Of a stretch of DNA of 6,321 nt, positions 1 through 6,321 are shown piece after piece (the first letter of the stretch is position 1; the number at the start of each line of letters is the position of its first letter). A program made the translations under genes and the position numbers. The stretch comes from Zygophlyctis sp. KS116 (taxonomy: Eukaryota; Fungi; Chytridiomycota): positions 1 through 6,321 of the forward strand of contig BAAFSQ010000446.1 in NCBI GenBank assembly GCA_054661495.1, read 5' to 3'. The notes under the pieces were generated by a model, which was not told where the DNA came from, made no database searches, and saw only the letters and a program-made list of their open reading frames with translations.

Positions 1-450
1 CACATGATCTTGGAACGGGAACTCAAGCAGCTCAGGAAATCAAATTAAATGATCTAAATGGTGTAGGAATTGTTTGTCTTTTCAACAAAAGTTATTTGGT
101 GATTAATTCTTGTCTTCGTTTGAGTGAGAGTTATTTAAAGTAATTGAATTAAGTTGAAAAGTTTATATCTTTGGTTATATAAAGATATCTGGTTTCCCAG
201 ACTCTAACAAACCTGATAATATGATAGACTCGGAAACCTTGGATCAGTCTCAAACTCCAACATACTCTCGGGCCTAGTACCTTTTTTCCCTGTTCAGGGT
301 TTTTCATGGCTAGTAAATGCTTAGGATTTCTACTTGTTCTGAATTAAATTTAAGTGACTAATTTAATTCCTCTAAGAAATCTGTTGATTTTAGTTAGTTA
401 AACCTCAATCTTACTCTAAACTCAATCTGTTGGAAAACCCCGATTTTTCA

Positions 451-454
451 CAAA
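451..454. repeat. Target-site duplication CAAA (left copy)
   Basis: caaa|TGTTAC at the left junction and GCAACA|caaa at the right junction (4922-4925). Confidence 0.85.
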
Positions 455-669
455 TGTTACGGTCTGAACGATCTCAGACTGTATGAAATAAGAGTAACAA
501 CCAAAAATACTTTGTATTAAAAAGTACAAAAGATCCCTAAGTCCGAGTAAGCCTCCATAAGCACCAAGACTCGATCACTAAGCCATGTAAGCACCTAAAC
601 ATAGATCTAGCTTTATAACCTAAAACAAGAACCTAGACAGTCATTAACTTGAGTCTCTAAGACGCAACA
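455..669 (-). repeat. 3' LTR of element 1 (215 bp)
   Basis: Matches 4707-4921 except at 615/4867 and 663/4915. Minus-strand ends are TGTTGC...GTAACA, and the PPT lies immediately upstream. Confidence 0.97.
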
Positions 670-1715
670 GTACCCCCCCTCCTGAATTATCCGATTGATG
701 ATTTTCCAATTCAGCGTTAGAACTTGCTAATTCCGTGAGGCTAATCCATGGGGCTAAATACACTCCACTATGTGGGTTTTCTAATTCTGAGCCATCTGGG
801 CGCTTAAGATAATATGAGTTGTGAGGTCCGATCCCATAGATTATAAATGGGTTAACCCTTCCACTTAAATTGTAACTTTAATTTAGTATAATTTTTAAGC
901 TTCACGAATTCTCCAATCTTAAAAGTCCTATGATCCTTAGATGTACTTGCATAAGCTTCCGCATTTTGTTGAGATCTTTTTAAAGCAAGAGCTCTATTCT
1001 GTCCTAGTCTGGTTAACTCTCGTGTGGTTTGGAGAGATATATCAGATTCACTTCTGCTATAAATAAAAGTATCACCAGGGAGACGAGGATTAAGTCCATA
1101 GACGAGGTAAAATGGTGCAAATCCAGTAACATCATGTTTCCGAGCATTTAGATTAAAAACTGCAGCCGGGACGAATTCGTCCCATTTCTCGCGAGTACCC
1201 AGTGTCATTTTTGTCAACATTGCTCCTAAAGTACCATTTACTCTCTCGACCATACCATTTGTTCTTGGATGGTATGGTGTGCTTGGATAATGATTTATAG
1301 CCTGGATTTGCAGGTATTCACTTAAAGTATGCCAAGTAAAGACAGGTGCCCTGTCACTGACTATTTCTTTTGGTGCACCAAAGGCCAGCATGAGCTTGTA
1401 AATAAATTTCGCCACTGTTACGGCAGTTCTATCCGGGGTTGCTTCAGCGACTACAAAGCGTGTTGCATGATCTACGGCAACTATAATATTAGAGTTTCTC
1501 TTTTCACTTGGTTCCAGATCTTGTATAAAATCTATTGACCACCGGTAGAAGGGTAATCCAGTAGGAGGGATGGGGATAGACGGTTCTCCGCTACATCGAT
1601 TACTTCTATTTAATTGGCAGACTTTACAACTGGCTACTAGATCTTTTAAACTTTTTAGTTGCTGAGGCCACCAACCTCGAGTGCGCAGAGAATCAAATAC
1701 AGAGTCAGTGCCCAA
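644..1715 (-). pseudogene. Integrase (HHCC remnant, DDE core, GPY/F motif), frameshifted near 1716 and at 851-854
   Basis: WWP...CKVCQ, WSIDFI, IVSDRA, HPRTNGMVERVN. KWKG continues, after a 4-nt insertion, as PFIIYGIGPHNSYYLKRPDG...SGGGVLLRLRDSS* with the stop at 644-646 inside the LTR. Confidence 0.93.
673..683 (-). promoter_or_regulatory. Polypurine tract (plus-strand primer), AGGAGGGGGGG
   Basis: Purine run on the minus strand, separated from the TG of the 3' LTR by 3 nt (TAC). Confidence 0.92.
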
Positions 1716-3660
1716 AAGATTTCGTGCAGTTGAGTCACCATCTGAGTCCTCTGATTTTGACCAATGTAGGGCACCCAGTAAGATACTCCAAGATACGTCA
1801 CCTTTCTTAGTAATTTTCCATTTTTTAAATGCATATACTTCTTATTCTTTTTCAATAATGTTTTGAACATTGCCGGAAGTGAAGTGGGTAATTGAAGATT
1901 TTTAAGAATATATATAGCGAATATTGGCCAGTTTTCCATAGTAGTTTTTGAAGGGTCTTGCAGTACAGCATTTTCCAAAGGTTCTTCTTCAGAATTTTTT
2001 AGAAAAGATAGGTCGAACAACGAATCGGCATCTTCTTCTTTCTCCGAAATCGAGCTAATCAGAGATGAGTGTATATAAGATTTATTCTGATCAAACTGAT
2101 TGTCCGCTTCCGGCCTTGATAGACAATCGGCTACAACGTTTTTGGTTCCAGGAATATACGTCACCTCAAGGTTGAAATCTGATAAGAATTCTTGCCATCT
2201 ACACTGCCGCTCGTTTAATAATTGAGGTTTCTTAAAATACGTTAAATTTTTGTGGTCACAGCGTATCTTAACCGGACTATCAGTGTGAATAAGTAGGTGG
2301 CGCCAATTTTCTAAAGATGCTTTGATCGCTAGCATTTCTTTGTCATAAATGGCATAATTCCTTTCGGCACTTGTCAATGTTCGACTGTAGAAAGAAATTG
2401 GTACCTCTACTCCGGAATCACTAATCTGATGCAACGCGCCTCCTAATGCGACTTTCGAGCAATCTGTATATAGAATAAAAGTTTTTCTTCGATCAGGAAT
2501 AGATAAAAACCCTTCTTCAGCGAAACTCATCTTTAATAAGTTAAACGAAGATTCAGCATCTGCGTTCCAAATAAACTGGTTCTCCTTCTTTAGTAACGAA
2601 TAAAGGTGTCGAGCCTTTGCTGAATAATCTTTTATAAAGTTTCTATAGTAATTGCATAACCCCAAAAATCTTTGAAGAGACTTAATTCTTGTAGGAGTTT
2701 TGAAATTTAAAATTGATTGAATCTTTTCCTTTTGCATATTGACTCCTCTAGAAGAAAGTGTATGGCCAAGAAATTCCACTTCTGGTACTTCAAACACACA
2801 TTTTTCCAAGTTTGCTACCAGTTTGTTTTGCGTTAAGATGTCGAGGACTTTCAGGATCATATTTCTATGTTTGACAGGGTCTGATTCATAGATTAATATG
2901 TCATCCAGGTATGCATAAAGACCTCTACCAATCAAGTCCTGGAGAATCGTATCCATCAATTTCTGAAAGTGTCCTGGGGCGTTCTTTAATCCAAATGGGA
3001 TCACATTATACATAAATTTGCCAAATTTGGAAACAAAAGAAGTTTTCGACTCGTCCCCTTTTCGAATTCTTAACTGATGAAATGCACCTTTAAGATCAAT
3101 TTTTGTGAATAAACACCTGTTCTGTGCAGAAAGATAATGAAAAATGTCTTCAATATTAGGTAGGATAGCTTGAATAGAATCAGTAATCTTATTTAGTTCT
3201 CTATAGTCAATACAAAGCCTTAAAGACCCATCTGGTTTTTTAACAAAAAGGACTGGGCAGCCGCCATCAGCATTTGAGACTGAGATATTTCCTGATTTCA
3301 ACCCATCGTTCAAAGCGTTTCGAAGTGCGTCTTCCTCTTTGGATGAAAGCTTATAAGGGGTAGCAGAGGGCAACCTAGAACCTGGAGTGAGATTTATAGG
3401 CATGGCGCAACTTTCTTGATAATCTGGAATCTTACTTAGTTTCCCTAGATCAAACACAGACTCGTACTTTTTGAGATAATCTGGCAAGTTCGCCTCTGCA
3501 TTGTCACACTTCAATGACAATATAGAAGTGGAGCTTCCTTTGTCCTTAAAACAAACAAAGTAAACTTGCAGTTGGTCCTTCTCAGAAATTTTCTGTAAAG
3601 CTTCCATTGATACGGTGGTGGCTACAATATTTCTTTGTTTAAATTTTAGACTTCGAGTGG
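1716..3660 (-). pseudogene. pol: Pol: reverse transcriptase (about 2750-3400) and RNase H (about 2110-2480), acidic linker, start of integrase zinc finger
   Basis: VLFVKKPDGSLRLCIDYRELN, FTKIDLKGAFHQLRI, IPFGLKNAP, YLDD (2900-2911), EFLGH, LYTDCS, YDKEMLAI, CDHKNL, VADCLSR in ORF 1655-3733. Confidence 0.96.
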
Positions 3661-3683
3661 GTTTAATTTTAGACTTCGAGTGG
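3637..3683. repeat. Tandem duplication, 24-nt and 23-nt units
   Basis: gtttaaattttagacttcgagtgg (3637-3660) followed by gtttaattttagacttcgagtgg (3661-3683). Confidence 0.95.
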
Positions 3684-3726
3684 AGCAGTCGATCATTATC
3701 TGATTTTTCTCTAACCAACCCAGAAT
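3637..3726 (-). pseudogene. C-terminal remnant of the aspartic protease
   Basis: A third frame reads ILGWLEKNQIMIDCSTRSLK, resembling the retropepsin C-terminal pattern (LGxxWL....IDxxxRxLxF). It joins the pol frame if the 23-nt duplicate at 3661-3683 is removed. No D(S/T)G motif is present. Confidence 0.7.
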
Positions 3727-4643
3727 TCAACATAATCTCGGCAGACTAAACAACATTTCAACTTGAGTAGAGTTTCCTTTAAAATCGACCATTTTTCTCC
3801 TTCTAAGCTTTTCCATTTTATTTTCTGAGTATCCTGAGAAAAATTACTTAGATCCATAGGGTCACCAGCGGGTAGAGTTCCAGGAATAGTAACCGAGTAA
3901 CCATCGTGCTCCAAAGAAACAATCCTATTCGACTCTTCTGCCTTAAGATATCTCTTAATTTCTGCGTAATTTGACTTCATATCCGGATTTATTAAAAATA
4001 TATCCCTGAGATTCAATTTAACATCAGCATTCAAAGTTTTTATGACACTTAACCCGAAATCCGAGTAAACGTCAAGGCCAGCCTGAATAATCAAAGATTC
4101 AGCATCTGCTAAATGATCATGCATTCTTTTCTTTCCCTGCCTCAATTTATCCAGCTTCATTTTTGCTTGAGATCTAGATTCACGATTCATAAAATGTTCA
4201 ACAAAGCTAGAAGAGAATGCATGGAAATCACGCAATTCAGGTACATGGTAGTGACGAGATCTGTCACGCAGGGCCTGATACCAAACTTAAGCACTACCAG
4301 AGAGAAGACTAGACACAAAAGTAATCTTGGAAAAGTCATCATTAAACAATCCTGCTTTCACCTTCAGATAATCATTGACATCACCCCAAAATATATCAAA
4401 ACCTTCAGCACTACCATCGTACTGTAATGGTATTCCCAATTTTGGCGTTTTACTGATAGTAGAGTTTCTCTGAGAAAGAATATTAACCTGCTCCTGTAAA
4501 GACTGAACCATTGCAGAGAGTATTCCAAATTGGTCAGGTAGCTGAGGAGTGTGGCTTCCAGTAGGGGTATGGACTCCAACTGGGTATTCCGTATTTATAG
4601 AGAAGTTCCCTGGGGGAGTGTGAGTAGGATCCGAGAAAGACAT
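3711..4643 (-). pseudogene. gag: Gag (retrotransposon capsid-like, partial zinc knuckle), interrupted by in-frame TAA at 4287-4289
   Basis: ORFs 4287-4658 and 3711-4235 share one frame and join as LLSGSA*VWYQALRDRSRHYHVPELRDF. First ATG is at 4643. Motifs: P..YDGS, LxGxAxxWY, KLRQGK, PMDLS, CxxC. Colinear with the element 2 Gag. Confidence 0.9.
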
Positions 4644-4693
4644 TAGTTTGCACTTCAATAAACTAAAATAGACTTCTTCAAAACTATTAGGAG

Positions 4694-4704
4694 GTACTTT
4701 TTAA
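4694..4704 (-). promoter_or_regulatory. Primer-binding site of element 1, self-priming type (TTAAAAAGTAC)
   Basis: Starts 2 nt after the 5' LTR end, has no TGG, and is the exact reverse complement of the LTR 11-mer at 4769-4779. Confidence 0.82.
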
Positions 4705-4706
4705 AA

Positions 4707-4921
4707 TGTTACGGTCTGAACGATCTCAGACTGTATGAAATAAGAGTAACAACCAAAAATACTTTGTATTAAAAAGTACAAAAGATCCCTAAGTCCGAGT
4801 AAGCCTCCATAAGCACCAAGACTCGATCACTAAGCCATGTAAGCACCTAAACATAGATCTAGCTTTCTAACCTAAAACAAGAACCTAGACAGTCATTAAC
4901 TTGAGTCTCTAAGAAGCAACA
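4707..4921 (-). repeat. 5' LTR of element 1 (215 bp)
   Basis: 213/215 identical to 455-669 and lies upstream of gag on the minus strand. Confidence 0.97.
4769..4779 (-). promoter_or_regulatory. Predicted transcript 5' end / self-primer of element 1 (GTACTTTTTAA); predicted TSS about 4779
   Basis: 11/11 complementary to the PBS. The TSS is inferred by analogy to S. pombe Tf1. Confidence 0.7.
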
Positions 4922-4925: not shown

Positions 4926-5204
4926 CTGTTACCCCCTGTTTTAGGTGTATCAATGTTTCAATTAAAATTTGGTGATCAATTAAGCTCAAGTTACTTGAAA
5001 TTTTAAATGCTGGATTGCAAAAGCAGATGAAAAATTTGTGTATTAATTAGAAGCAATTGGATGCTTGGTTTTTCAGAAAATAAATTGGTTTTCTGAATAA
5101 CTAGTTTAATTTTTATTGATCTTTGACCAAGAGAGTTTATTGATCAATTAAGTACGAAAAAATACTAAAATCAGCTATAAAGTAAAGCCGGTTTTATCAA
5201 AATC

Positions 5205-5460
5205 TGTCAATCAGTGATTGCTTATTAAATTATCAGTCTATAAGATCCATTTAATCTTATCACTCTTATTGGTATATAATCTTATTAGAACTATTATGCT
5301 TTAGAACCTTCTAGTTTTAGGTCATCGTGTTAGGTTGAAACACGTCGGACCTTTCCTTTGTAGAAAATATCAATAAAGATATTTACTATAAATGTAATTA
5401 CTCAATAAAGATATTTACCATAAAGGGTTTTATCTGAGGTCATTAAGTTTAGATCTCACA
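5205..5460 (+). repeat. Putative 5' LTR of element 2 (end at 5460 well supported; start at TGT 5205, alternatively TGTTAG 5328)
   Basis: Ends ...CTCACA and contains TATATAA (5273-5279), two AATAAA and a U5-like hairpin. The partner LTR is outside the window, so the start is a guess. Confidence 0.55.
5370..5424 (+). repeat. 23-bp direct repeat (22/23 identical, 32-nt period), each copy with AATAAA
   Basis: tcaataaagatatttactataaa (5370-5392) and tcaataaagatatttaccataaa (5402-5424). Confidence 0.93.
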
Positions 5461-5462
5461 GA

Positions 5463-5473
5463 ATATTTTCTAC
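5463..5473 (+). promoter_or_regulatory. Primer-binding site of element 2, self-priming type (ATATTTTCTAC)
   Basis: 2 nt after the ACA end and the exact reverse complement of GTAGAAAATAT at 5360-5370. Confidence 0.8.
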
Positions 5474-5477
5474 CTCA

Positions 5478-6321
5478 ATGTCTGAATCTAGACCTTCTTC
5501 GCCGTTGGACAATGTCTTATCCAATACGGCAAATATTGAACAATTAATAAATAAGCAAAATGAAATGGAGGGACTGCTTGGTCAAATGTATCAAATGATG
5601 AATAAGTTACAAGGGAATCAAGCCACCATTTTGAAAGAGGGCAGCGTCAGGAAAGACGCGAAGCTACCAGATGTTAAAGAGTTCTCGGGTAAACCTCAAG
5701 ATTTTTCTCAATTTGAAATCTTATTGGAATCTTTTTTTAGAAATCAGCCTACCAGATTCTCACAGGATTACACGAGAATTGATTATGTTGGTTCTCGTCT
5801 TGTTGGTAATGCATTGGAGTGGTTTACCTCTCTTCGTTTAGGTGAAAAGAAGCGCCCTTCGGAGCTTTCTACTTCTTATTCTGCATTTTGGGAACGATTC
5901 AGTCTAGCCTTTGCCGATCCAAATGAATCTGATGTAGCCGAAAATGAATTATATACTTTGAAACAAGGGGTCACATCTATAAGAGCTTTTATAACCAAAT
6001 TTGAATCAGTTCGTGCATGTACAGTGTCAACAGATGATCGAATCGATGTCTTCATTCGGGCCCTGAACTCAAAAGGAAATTTTGGATAGTGCTCGTTTCC
6101 AGCCAAAACTCAAAACAGATTATCTGGTTCTTCGGTCATTCTTGCTTCAGGGGGTTTCTAATAATGAGATTTGCACGGAAACAGGCATAGCTCCCATGGA
6201 TTTGTCTCGTATGGAACATTTCTCAAAGTCTAAATGGAAATTTATAGCTCCTGAGGAATATCAACAGTTCAAAAAATCTTGCGCTTCTATAAATCTCTGC
6301 TTCAAATGTCGCGAATTTAAG
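5478..6321 (+). pseudogene. gag: Gag of element 2, frameshifted near 6072, running off the window end
   Basis: Coiled-coil-like N-terminus, LPDVKEFSGK, LVGNALEWF, LKQG. From 6073 the +1 frame reads KEILDSARFQP...APMDLSRMEHFSKSKWKFI...LCFKCREFK, matching element 1 PMDLS...KWK...CLVCRDY. Confidence 0.88.

What the first reader, a model, noticed from the sequence alone, without database searches (positions are those of the whole stretch)
5360..5473. Element 2 has the same self-priming geometry with a different sequence (natural covariation)
Seen: GTAGAAAATAT (5360-5370) pairs 11/11 with ATATTTTCTAC (5463-5473), again 2 nt after the LTR's ACA end. The two elements' primers agree at only 5 of 11 positions, yet both pair perfectly, and their LTRs are otherwise not obviously alignable. 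Independent recurrence at the same position and length argues strongly against chance and suggests a family of self-priming elements in this genome.
Basis: partly seen in the sequence, partly recalled or inferred. Interest (0 to 1): 0.82.

Follow-up and report, generated by a model that had tools for sequence, protein, structure and literature searches.

The report
Self-priming LTR retrotransposons in a chytrid
Two jumping genes in this freshwater chytrid genome carry, inside their terminal repeat, an 11-letter stretch that pairs perfectly with the primer site just after the repeat, so they most likely start copying themselves with a piece of their own RNA instead of a tRNA; yeast Tf1 is known to do this, and here the trick shows up in many sequence versions.

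Summary
GTAGAAAATAT (5360-5370) is the exact reverse complement of ATATTTTCTAC (5463-5473). The second stretch begins 2 nt after the ACA end of a 256-nt LTR (5205-5460). That end is fixed by paralogous 3'/solo LTRs and by an independent metagenome contig.

Chance is excluded:
- About 3e-4 occurrences are expected for this site.
- The geometry occurs at 20 places in 147 kb of held loci, against 1.7 in shuffles, always at an LTR/gag junction.
- 23 elements carry 14 different arm sequences, and each matches its own primer site perfectly.
- Close subfamilies differ by compensatory double changes.
- Metagenomic relatives from other organisms, and a Fusarium element, show the same layout.

The arm follows a T-rich run, starts with a purine and lies just upstream of AATAAA. 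This fits the first bases of the transcript, as in Tf1/Tf2 self-priming.

Not shown: the transcription start, the RNase H cut and the priming itself. No RNA data exist.

The elements are Ty3/gypsy with no detectable chromodomain. They nest among fungal and vertebrate relatives.

Verdict: a real feature and a new member of a known kind. The scan had already noted Element 1 on this window. It also noted an own-RNA (poly(A)-junction) priming idea on other contigs of this genome.

The parts
5205..5460 (+). 5' LTR of Element 2 (256 nt, TGT...ACA)
   Evidence: Paralog matches begin at query position 280-281 = window 5204-5205. 3'/solo copies stop at ACA 5458-5460. Contig breakpoints in independent runs lie at 5204/5205 and 5460.
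5360..5370 (+). Self-primer arm GTAGAAAATAT, predicted first 11 nt of the transcript (start of R)
   Evidence: 11/11 complement of 5463-5473. It follows the T-rich run CCTTTCCTTT, starts with a purine, and is followed 2 nt later by AATAAA. Compensatory variants occur in C74, C344, C224 and C586.
5372..5409 (+). Two AATAAA poly(A)-signal motifs (5372-5377, 5404-5409) inside a 23-nt direct repeat, placed in predicted R
   Evidence: Direct repeat D3. The motif recurs 12-22 nt after the arm start in most lineages.
5436..5457 (+). Predicted U5 hairpin (GAGGTC/GATCTC, 6 bp) ending 3 nt before the LTR end
   Evidence: MFE fold. The pairs are kept through GC<->CG and GU/AU/UA changes in relatives.
5461..5462 (+). 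2-nt spacer GA between the LTR end and the primer site
   Evidence: Conserved as GA in the whole Element-2 lineage; TT in the Element-1 lineage.
5463..5473 (+). Primer binding site ATATTTTCTAC, complementary to the element's own arm
   Evidence: No TGG tRNA-type site. No tRNA gene or Rfam family in the window. The 16-mer complement is not enriched elsewhere in the genome.
5478..6321 (+). Element 2 gag (Retrotrans_gag / Ty3_capsid); frame changes near 6067-6071; cut by the contig end
   Evidence: Pfam. tblastn against the intact C74 relative switches frame at 6067-6071.
4707..4921 (-). 5' LTR of Element 1 (215 nt)
   Evidence: 99% identical to 455-669. Solo/3' copies stop at ACA. Contig breakpoint at 4921.
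4769..4779 (-). Element 1 self-primer arm GTACTTTTTAA
   Evidence: 11/11 with 4694-4704. Invariant in 9 copies whose U3 regions have diverged.
4694..4704 (-). Element 1 primer binding site TTAAAAAGTAC, 2 nt (TT) after the LTR
4710..4735 (-). Element 1 predicted U5 hairpin (3 + 7 bp)
   Evidence: Fold. Conserved in 8 of 9 relatives, with few changes.
670..4706 (-). Element 1 internal region: gag, RT, RNase H, integrase, with several frame breaks and a shortened protease region; polypurine tract at 670-684
   Evidence: Pfam. tblastn against the intact C534 relative. The polypurine tract was read.
455..669 (-). 3' LTR of Element 1; flanked by a 4-bp target duplication TTTG
   Evidence: flanks read.

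Best explanation
Element 2, like Element 1, is a Ty3/gypsy LTR retrotransposon that starts reverse transcription by Tf1-type self-priming. Transcription begins at G5360 inside the 5' LTR. The first 11 nt of the RNA fold back over about 90 nt of R-U5 onto the complementary site 2 nt past the LTR. The element's RNase H cuts after nt 11. The released 11-nt RNA, still paired, primes minus-strand synthesis through the spacer, U5 and R. Transfer to the 3' R then follows as in any LTR element.

Shown: the exact complementarity, its position, its covariation, the absence of a tRNA-type site, and the Ty3/gypsy gene content.

Inferred: the transcription start at the arm, the cleavage, and the priming itself.
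For: - Pairing and position. 11/11 pairing sits exactly where a primer site belongs, 2 nt after the LTR end.
- Covariation. 23 elements in the held loci carry 14 distinct arms, each perfectly matched to its own site. Non-cognate pairs average 48% complementarity. Within the Element-2 lineage 4 of 11 columns show double changes; within the Element-1 lineage 6 of 11 do; 100% of cells are paired.
- Enrichment. The geometry is enriched about 12-fold over shuffles and is found only at LTR/gag junctions.
- Other organisms. Relatives elsewhere keep the layout with new sequences: GTAGGAATCAA/TTGATTCCTAC after ACA+GA, and GTAGAGATTAT/ATAATCTCTAC after ACA+GT, in metagenome contigs. A Fusarium relative has 9 bp after ACA+CT.
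- Arm as 5' end of R. The arm follows a pyrimidine run and starts with a purine in 22 of the 23 elements (the C506 arm as scored begins with T). AATAAA lies 12-22 nt from its start in most lineages. Subfamily LTRs diverge upstream of the arm and are conserved from it onward.
- Folding. Both leaders fold with the 11-bp closing helix plus a hairpin just before the LTR end (z = -3.2 each). Tf1 needs a U5-IR-like stem-loop there (cited in PMC7175516).
- Mechanism precedent. [quoted passage not shown] Tj1 is predicted to do the same (PMC4600332).
- No competing primer. The window has no tRNA gene and no Rfam hit, and the genome holds no enriched 16-mer complementary to the site.
Against: - There are no RNA data: no RNA run holds the element, so the transcription start, the poly(A) site and the cleaved primer are unobserved.
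- No TATA box is evident upstream of the arm.
- The two copies in the window are themselves defective (frame breaks), so any function is inferred for the family, not for these copies.
- The elements lack the chromodomain typical of the Tf1/sushi group.
- No named Tf1/sushi reference could be placed in the tree.
- Covariation proves pairing, not priming.
Confidence: 0.8

Rival explanations
1. The arm/site duplex is a conserved RNA structure with another role (packaging, dimerisation, translation control or strand-transfer aid). Priming is then done by some other, unidentified RNA.
For: Covariation demonstrates base pairing only. No experiment links it to priming.
Against: The 3' arm sits exactly where primer sites sit, 2-4 nt after the LTR's CA. 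No alternative primer site (TGG... tRNA type) lies between the LTR and gag, which is only 4-50 nt further on. The 16-mer complement is not enriched elsewhere in the genome. Tf1 uses the same geometry for priming (PMC7175516).
Confidence: 0.08
2. Priming comes from the 3' end of the RNA. The arm copy in the 3' LTR marks the poly(A) site, and the polyadenylated 3' end anneals to the site after the 5' LTR. This is the poly(A)-junction reading noted elsewhere in this genome (s1-545057, s1-559220).
For: The arm lies in the LTR, so it is present near both RNA ends if it is in R. In the Element-1 lineage the spacer is TT and the arm ends in AA, so two added A residues would lengthen the duplex to 13 bp.
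Against: In Element 2 and its lineage the spacer is GA, and in other lineages GT, AGT or AAGT, none of which pairs with a poly(A) tail. AATAAA lies downstream of the arm, the wrong side for a cleavage site at the arm. A long tail would leave an unpaired 3' flap. Conservation begins at or just before the arm, as expected for a U3/R border.
Confidence: 0.05
3. The same Tf1-type primer, but used in trans: the 5' arm of one packaged RNA pairs with the site of the co-packaged RNA.
For: Sequence alone cannot separate cis from trans pairing. Retroelements package RNA dimers (general knowledge).
Against: Both leaders fold in cis with the helix as the closing stem, better than shuffles. The loop is short (58-140 nt) in all lineages.
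Confidence: 0.05
4. Chance inverted repeat in AT-rich DNA.
For: The 11-mer is AT-rich. Three 10-nt chance hits were seen elsewhere in the loci.
Against: Expectation is 3.4e-4 per site. There are 20 sites against 1.7 in shuffles, all at LTR/gag junctions. 14 or more covarying versions exist.
Confidence: 0.01

Closest known systems
Tf1 and Tf2 of Schizosaccharomyces pombe (founding self-priming Ty3/gypsy elements)
   Same: The first 11 nt of the RNA are complementary to the primer site just after the 5' LTR (PMC7175516). No tRNA site. A hairpin lies in U5 next to the site. Intact relatives here encode one long gag-pol frame of 1300-1540 aa, as I recall Tf1 also does (not checked in a paper here).
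   Different: No chromodomain or Tf2-type SH3 domain is detectable after the integrase. The host is a chytrid. Element 1 has a 4-bp target duplication. Arm length is 10-13 nt and the spacer 2-4 nt in sister lineages. The transcription start and the RNase H cut are untested here.
Tj1 of Schizosaccharomyces japonicus
   Same: Self-priming was inferred from LTR/primer-site complementarity, as here. Many element families cluster together in the genome (PMC4600332).
   Different: Tj1 was shown to transpose. Here nothing is tested, and both window copies are broken.
Tcn1 clade (Cryptococcus Tcn1, moss and club-moss Tcn1-like elements; one Batrachochytrium element was placed there)
   Same: Predicted self-priming in fungi and, by probable transfer, in plants (PMC6317226, PMC7175516). 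A chytrid element is on record in this clade (PMC2864245).
   Different: Those are chromodomain-bearing. Priming of the Batrachochytrium element was not described in that paper. Whether the present elements belong to the Tcn1 clade is untested.
Skippy/Maggy-type Dikarya elements and vertebrate sushi-type elements
   Same: They are among the nearest named database relatives of the RT-RNase H. The Fusarium relative fetched here has a 9-bp LTR/primer-site complement 2 nt after ACA and a very similar polypurine tract.
   Different: They carry SH3_Tf2-1 and chromo domains. RT identity is about 40-45%.
tRNA-primed Ty3/gypsy elements (e.g. Ty3)
   Same: The same gene order, LTR ends, polypurine tract, and a short spacer between LTR and primer site (2 nt in the two window elements).
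   Different: Their site matches a tRNA. Here the site covaries with the element's own LTR and has no TGG start.

Membership tests
Ty3/gypsy (Metaviridae) LTR retrotransposon | Direct LTRs ending TG...CA | tested here: met
   Element 2 LTR: TGT...ACA, 5205-5460. Element 1 LTRs are 99% identical.
Ty3/gypsy (Metaviridae) LTR retrotransposon | Gene order gag - protease - RT - RNase H - integrase | tested here: met
   Pfam on Element 1 pieces and on six intact relatives, including the C74 relative of Element 2. Element 2 itself shows only gag before the contig ends.
Ty3/gypsy (Metaviridae) LTR retrotransposon | Polypurine tract before the 3' LTR, and a target-site duplication | tested here: met
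   Element 1: G-rich tract at 670-684 and TTTG duplication. Similar tracts occur in relatives. Not testable for Element 2, whose 3' end is absent.
Tf1-type self-priming elements (by mechanism) | Primer site just after the 5' LTR, complementary to a stretch inside the LTR | tested here: met
   11/11 in both window elements. 23 elements, 14 versions.
Tf1-type self-priming elements (by mechanism) | The complementary stretch is the first bases of the transcript | not testable with these tools
   No RNA run holds the element. Indirect support: a pyrimidine run then a purine (22 of 23 elements), AATAAA downstream, and conservation starting at the arm.
Tf1-type self-priming elements (by mechanism) | RNase H cleavage after base 11 releases the primer | not testable with these tools
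   A biochemical step. The only relevant observation is that the duplex ends exactly at 11 bp, with mismatches beyond.
Tf1-type self-priming elements (by mechanism) | No tRNA-complementary primer site | tested here: met
   No TGG-type site between LTR and gag. The site covaries with the LTR. No tRNA or Rfam hit in the window. No enriched complement in the genome.
Tf1-type self-priming elements (by mechanism) | U5 stem-loop next to the primer site | tested here: inconclusive
   Predicted in both elements, with some compensatory changes in the Element-2 lineage. The alignments are small and the requirement is untested.
Tf1/sushi clade of chromoviruses (by descent) | RT groups with Tf1, sushi, Maggy and similar elements in a tree | tested here: inconclusive
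   The chytrid elements nest among Dikarya and fish/amphibian/lizard elements, apart from the plant and alga rows (SH-aLRT 99). No named Tf1/sushi or outgroup reference was obtainable.
Tf1/sushi clade of chromoviruses (by descent) | Chromodomain at the integrase C-terminus | tested here: not met
   No PF00385 or PF24626 in six intact relatives, even at E up to 5 on the C-terminal pieces. Many database relatives carry both.

The most novel reading that the evidence does not exclude
Self-priming may be the default way of starting reverse transcription for a whole chromodomain-less radiation of Ty3/gypsy elements in chytrids and their uncultured freshwater relatives. About sixteen mutually non-matching primer/site 'addresses' would then coexist in one 12.7-Mb genome. 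That would push the origin of Tf1-type priming to the base of the fungi or earlier. It would also suggest selection for private primers, so that families do not prime or interfere with each other.
Probability: 0.3. Interest if true: 0.55.

Novelty: new member of a known kind. Interest (0 to 1): 0.4.

Why it matters
Self-priming was worked out in one yeast element (Tf1) and has since been inferred from sequence in scattered fungi, vertebrates and a few plants.

This genome offers an unusually dense natural experiment: many related families share one geometry but carry different, perfectly compensated primer sequences, and they lack the chromodomain of the classical group.

- It gives strong comparative support that the pairing is under selection.
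- It extends the trait to an early-diverging fungal lineage.
- It gives annotators a rule for finding primer sites in elements that have no tRNA match.

It does not reveal a new mechanism.

Tried and rejected
- Whole-genome survey. Only about a third of the 64 or more pol-bearing copies were examined. Eight contigs hold too little sequence upstream of gag to judge.
- Reversed-sequence control for the geometry scan. It gave 10 hits. I rejected it because reversal preserves inverted repeats, and the Element-1 arm happens to be followed by TACA. Block shuffles were used instead.
- RNA evidence. No RNA run holds the element. The one possible RNA contig covers only 5844-6069.
- Papers. Levin 1995, Lin & Levin 1997 and the Esnault & Levin review are not held. 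Tf1 details are cited from PMC7175516.
- Chromodomain search on integrase C-termini. Nothing was found except a weak MLV-integrase-C-like motif.
- tRNA priming. Rejected.
- Poly(A)-junction priming. Considered for the Element-1 lineage because of its TT spacer. Rejected for Element 2, which has a GA spacer and AATAAA downstream of the arm.
- The Element-1 lines used an off-by-one LTR end and are superseded.
- The count of structure pairs was not used. The same pair counts were made in a script on alignments A1 and A2.

Full report
WHAT IS IN THE WINDOW

The 6321-base window is contig C446 of a 12.7-Mb, 1175-contig assembly. Earlier notes of this scan take the organism for a freshwater chytrid. 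The DNA is held by freshwater, lake and wetland metagenome runs from 16 studies.

The window is a nest of LTR retrotransposons.

- Element 1 lies on the minus strand. Its LTRs are at 4921..4707 and 669..455 and are 99% identical. It has a G-rich polypurine tract at 670-684 and a TTTG target duplication. Its pieces of gag, RT, RNase H and integrase are separated by frame breaks.
- Element 2 lies on the plus strand. It consists of a 5' LTR and the start of gag (Retrotrans_gag and Ty3_capsid). The frame changes near 6067-6071, and the contig ends at 6321.

CHECK OF THE OBSERVATION

GTAGAAAATAT occupies 5360-5370 and ATATTTTCTAC occupies 5463-5473. They are exact reverse complements. The bases next to the duplex mismatch on both sides, so it is exactly 11 bp.

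The LTR runs 5205-5460.
- Start. Paralogous copies begin to match at 5204-5205. Contigs from independent runs break there.
- End. Five 3' or solo copies lose similarity right after ACA. The intact C74 relative has two identical LTRs ending in the same ACA, one followed by its primer site and the other by flanking DNA. A contig from another metagenome matches the window only as far as 5460 (record 21).

Element 1 has the same layout: arm 4779..4769, site 4704..4694, spacer TT. Its arm agrees with that of Element 2 at 5 of 11 positions.

IS IT MORE THAN CHANCE?

- For this one site the expected number of matches in the LTR is 3.4e-4. Allowing offsets 0-5, 36 of 20000 shuffles gave one.
- I scanned 147 kb of non-redundant held loci for ACA, 1-4 nt, then a stretch of 11 nt or more whose complement lies in the preceding 220 nt. 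The scan found 20 sites, against a mean of 1.7 (maximum 4) in 30 block shuffles.
- Every real hit of 11 nt or more sits between an LTR and a gag start.

COVARIATION

The genome holds at least 64 Ty3/gypsy pol copies, many with intact frames of 1300-1540 aa. In the loci I could fetch, 23 elements show the geometry with 14 different arms. Each arm is perfectly complementary to its own site. Non-cognate arm/site pairs average 48% complementarity.

Within the Element-2 lineage the arm/site pairs are:
- GTAGAAAATAT / ATATTTTCTAC
- ATAGCGAATAT / ATATTCGCTAT
- ATAGCAAATAT / ATATTTGCTAT
- GTAGTAAATAT / ATATTTACTAC
- GTAGAAATTAT / ATAATTTCTAC

Four of the 11 columns carry double changes and all 66 cells are paired. 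In the Element-1 lineage eight copies keep GTACTTTTTAA while their U3 regions are unalignable. The C527 relative has AGATTAATCAA/TTGATTAATCT, which changes six columns on both sides.

A second deep lineage has arms of 10-13 nt and spacers AGT or AAGT. Examples are ATAATTGGATTAT, ATAATCAGATTAT, TAGTAGTTTTAT, AGTGGTTTAT and AGCGAATTAT. The C521 lineage has a 10-nt pair, GTCTTTTCAA/TTGAAAAGAC.

RELATIVES OUTSIDE THIS GENOME

I fetched contigs that encode the nearest database relatives of the RT.
- An ENA metagenome element has ...CCCTT|GTAGGAATCAA... and ...ACA|GA|TTGATTCCTAC.
- Two JGI metagenome contigs have GTAGAGATTAT and ACA|GT|ATAATCTCTAC.
- A very AT-rich contig has a candidate 12-nt pair.
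- A Fusarium oxysporum element has a 9-bp pair, ACA|CT|ACGTAGCTC, and a polypurine tract much like that of Element 1.

WHERE THE ARM SITS IN THE LTR

In all 23 elements the arm follows a T-rich or pyrimidine run, and in 22 of them it begins with a purine (the C506 arm as scored begins with T). In most lineages AATAAA lies 12-22 nt after its first base. Element 2 has two copies, at 5372-5377 and 5404-5409, inside a 23-nt direct repeat.

Subfamily LTRs are unalignable upstream and conserved from shortly before the arm onward. Assembly graphs of independent samples branch 7-9 nt upstream of the Element-1 arm.

This is what a U3/R border looks like: the arm is the start of R and the poly(A) signal lies inside R. 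It is the wrong arrangement for the arm to be a poly(A) site.

FOLDING

RNA from the arm to just past the site folds with the 11-bp helix as the closing stem in both elements (-23.2 and -18.3 kcal/mol, z = -3.2 each). A hairpin ends 3-4 nt before the LTR end.

In the Element-2 lineage that hairpin keeps its pairs through GC to CG and GU/AU/UA changes. In the Element-1 lineage it is mostly invariant. The alignments are small, so I rate the hairpin as suggestive only.

ALTERNATIVES

- tRNA priming. There is no TGG-type site. The site covaries with the LTR. The window has no tRNA gene or Rfam family. A 16-mer complementary to the site and its 3' neighbours is no commoner in the genome than its control, and occurs with 0-1 mismatch almost only at copies of the family.
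- Poly(A)-junction priming. This reading was noted on other contigs of this genome. It could fit the TT spacer of the Element-1 lineage. It does not fit the GA, GT, AGT or AAGT spacers elsewhere, nor the position of AATAAA.
- A structural role without priming. This cannot be excluded by sequence, but nothing else between the LTR and gag could serve as a primer site.

MECHANISM

The best explanation is Tf1-type self-priming. [quoted passage not shown] The same is predicted for Tj1 (PMC4600332), for Tcn1 and plant Tcn1-like elements, and for the TAR lineage of Ty1/copia (PMC6317226).

Shown here: the pairing, its position, its selection, and the lack of a tRNA site.

Inferred: the transcription start, the cut, and the priming.

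FAMILY PLACEMENT

The polyproteins are Ty3/gypsy by domain order.

The nearest database relatives are a mix of uncultured freshwater sequences, Dikarya (Fusarium, Penicillium, Trametes, Ceratobasidium) and fish, frog and lizard elements. Many of these carry SH3_Tf2-1 and chromo domains.

In a quick maximum-likelihood tree of 378 RT-RNase H columns, rooted on the alga row, the chytrid elements form two lineages nested among those fungal and vertebrate rows. They are separated from the plant and alga rows with SH-aLRT 99. One short row, C369, was left out. That taxon mix is what the literature describes for the Tf1/sushi group.

I had no named Tf1, sushi, Maggy or Ty3 sequence to anchor the tree. 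The chytrid elements also have no detectable chromodomain. I therefore file them as working like Tf1. Membership of the Tf1/sushi clade is left open.

NOVELTY

The mechanism is known. I found no paper in the searchable library that describes self-priming elements in chytrids. The only paper combining the terms places one Batrachochytrium element in the Tcn1 clade without discussing its priming.

What is new is the host lineage, the absence of a chromodomain, and the number of coexisting primer versions. This makes it a new member of a known kind, of moderate interest.

LIMITS

- Only part of the genome's elements could be fetched.
- No RNA data exist.
- Both copies in the window are defective.
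One functional test is listed under referred steps rather than proposed.

Noticed in passing
window 1-209 (+): The 3' part of a third LTR family, like those of contigs C521 and C531, ending CTCTAACA at 209. It holds GTCTTTTCAA at 76-85, which in C521 pairs with TTGAAAAGAC 2 nt after the LTR. Here it is followed by unrelated sequence, so this is a 3' or solo LTR.
   Followed up: partly
window about 262-454 (+): The stretch holds the motif CAGGGTTTTTCATGGCTAG. It resembles the GGGTTTTTAA(T/C)GGC motif found 35-50 nt upstream of the arm in the second chytrid lineage (C506, C537, C344 minus, C597, C603). It is probably another LTR fragment, and the motif may be a core promoter element.
   Followed up: no
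L042 (contig C537), LTR end and downstream: Here the complementarity is bipartite. The LTR has a run of nine T, then AG, then CAGTTTAT. The region after the LTR reads ATAAACTG, CTC, then TAAAAAAAAA. That gives 9 bp plus 11 bp around a 2-nt bulge, much longer than in the other families.
   Followed up: partly
window 5324-5359 and its relatives (alignment): A block reading GTGTTAGGTTGAAACACGTCGGACC, followed by a T-rich run, is nearly invariant upstream of the arm across Element-2 subfamilies whose remaining U3 has diverged. It contains its own small inverted repeat (GTGTT/AACAC). It could be a promoter or another cis element.
   Followed up: no
L035 (contig C74) and L036 (contig C344): In Element-2 relatives the single gag-pol frame runs into the 3' LTR, so the stop codon lies inside the LTR. 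The polypurine tract is coding. The C74 copy has two 100%-identical LTRs over 280 nt.
   Followed up: partly
L051, L052, L053 (metagenome contigs): These contigs end in exact 119- or 141-nt copies of their own starts and hold one LTR plus one internal region. This may be an assembler collapse of the two LTRs or reads from one-LTR circles; I cannot tell which.
   Followed up: no
window 3622-3726 (-): Compared with the intact C534 relative, about 158 residues around the protease of Element 1 correspond to only about 100 nt here. This copy has lost most of its protease region although its LTRs are 99% identical.
   Followed up: partly
window 6071 (+): A copy in another freshwater sample has 8 extra letters at this place, where the window's gag changes frame. 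Several nearby substitutions (6103-6107) also differ between samples.
   Followed up: no
hit P0003: One of the best-scoring relatives of the chytrid RT-RNase H (45% identity) is annotated in a corroboree frog genome. In the tree it sits with the other vertebrate elements. I saw no sign of transfer from a chytrid, but this was not examined further.
   Followed up: partly
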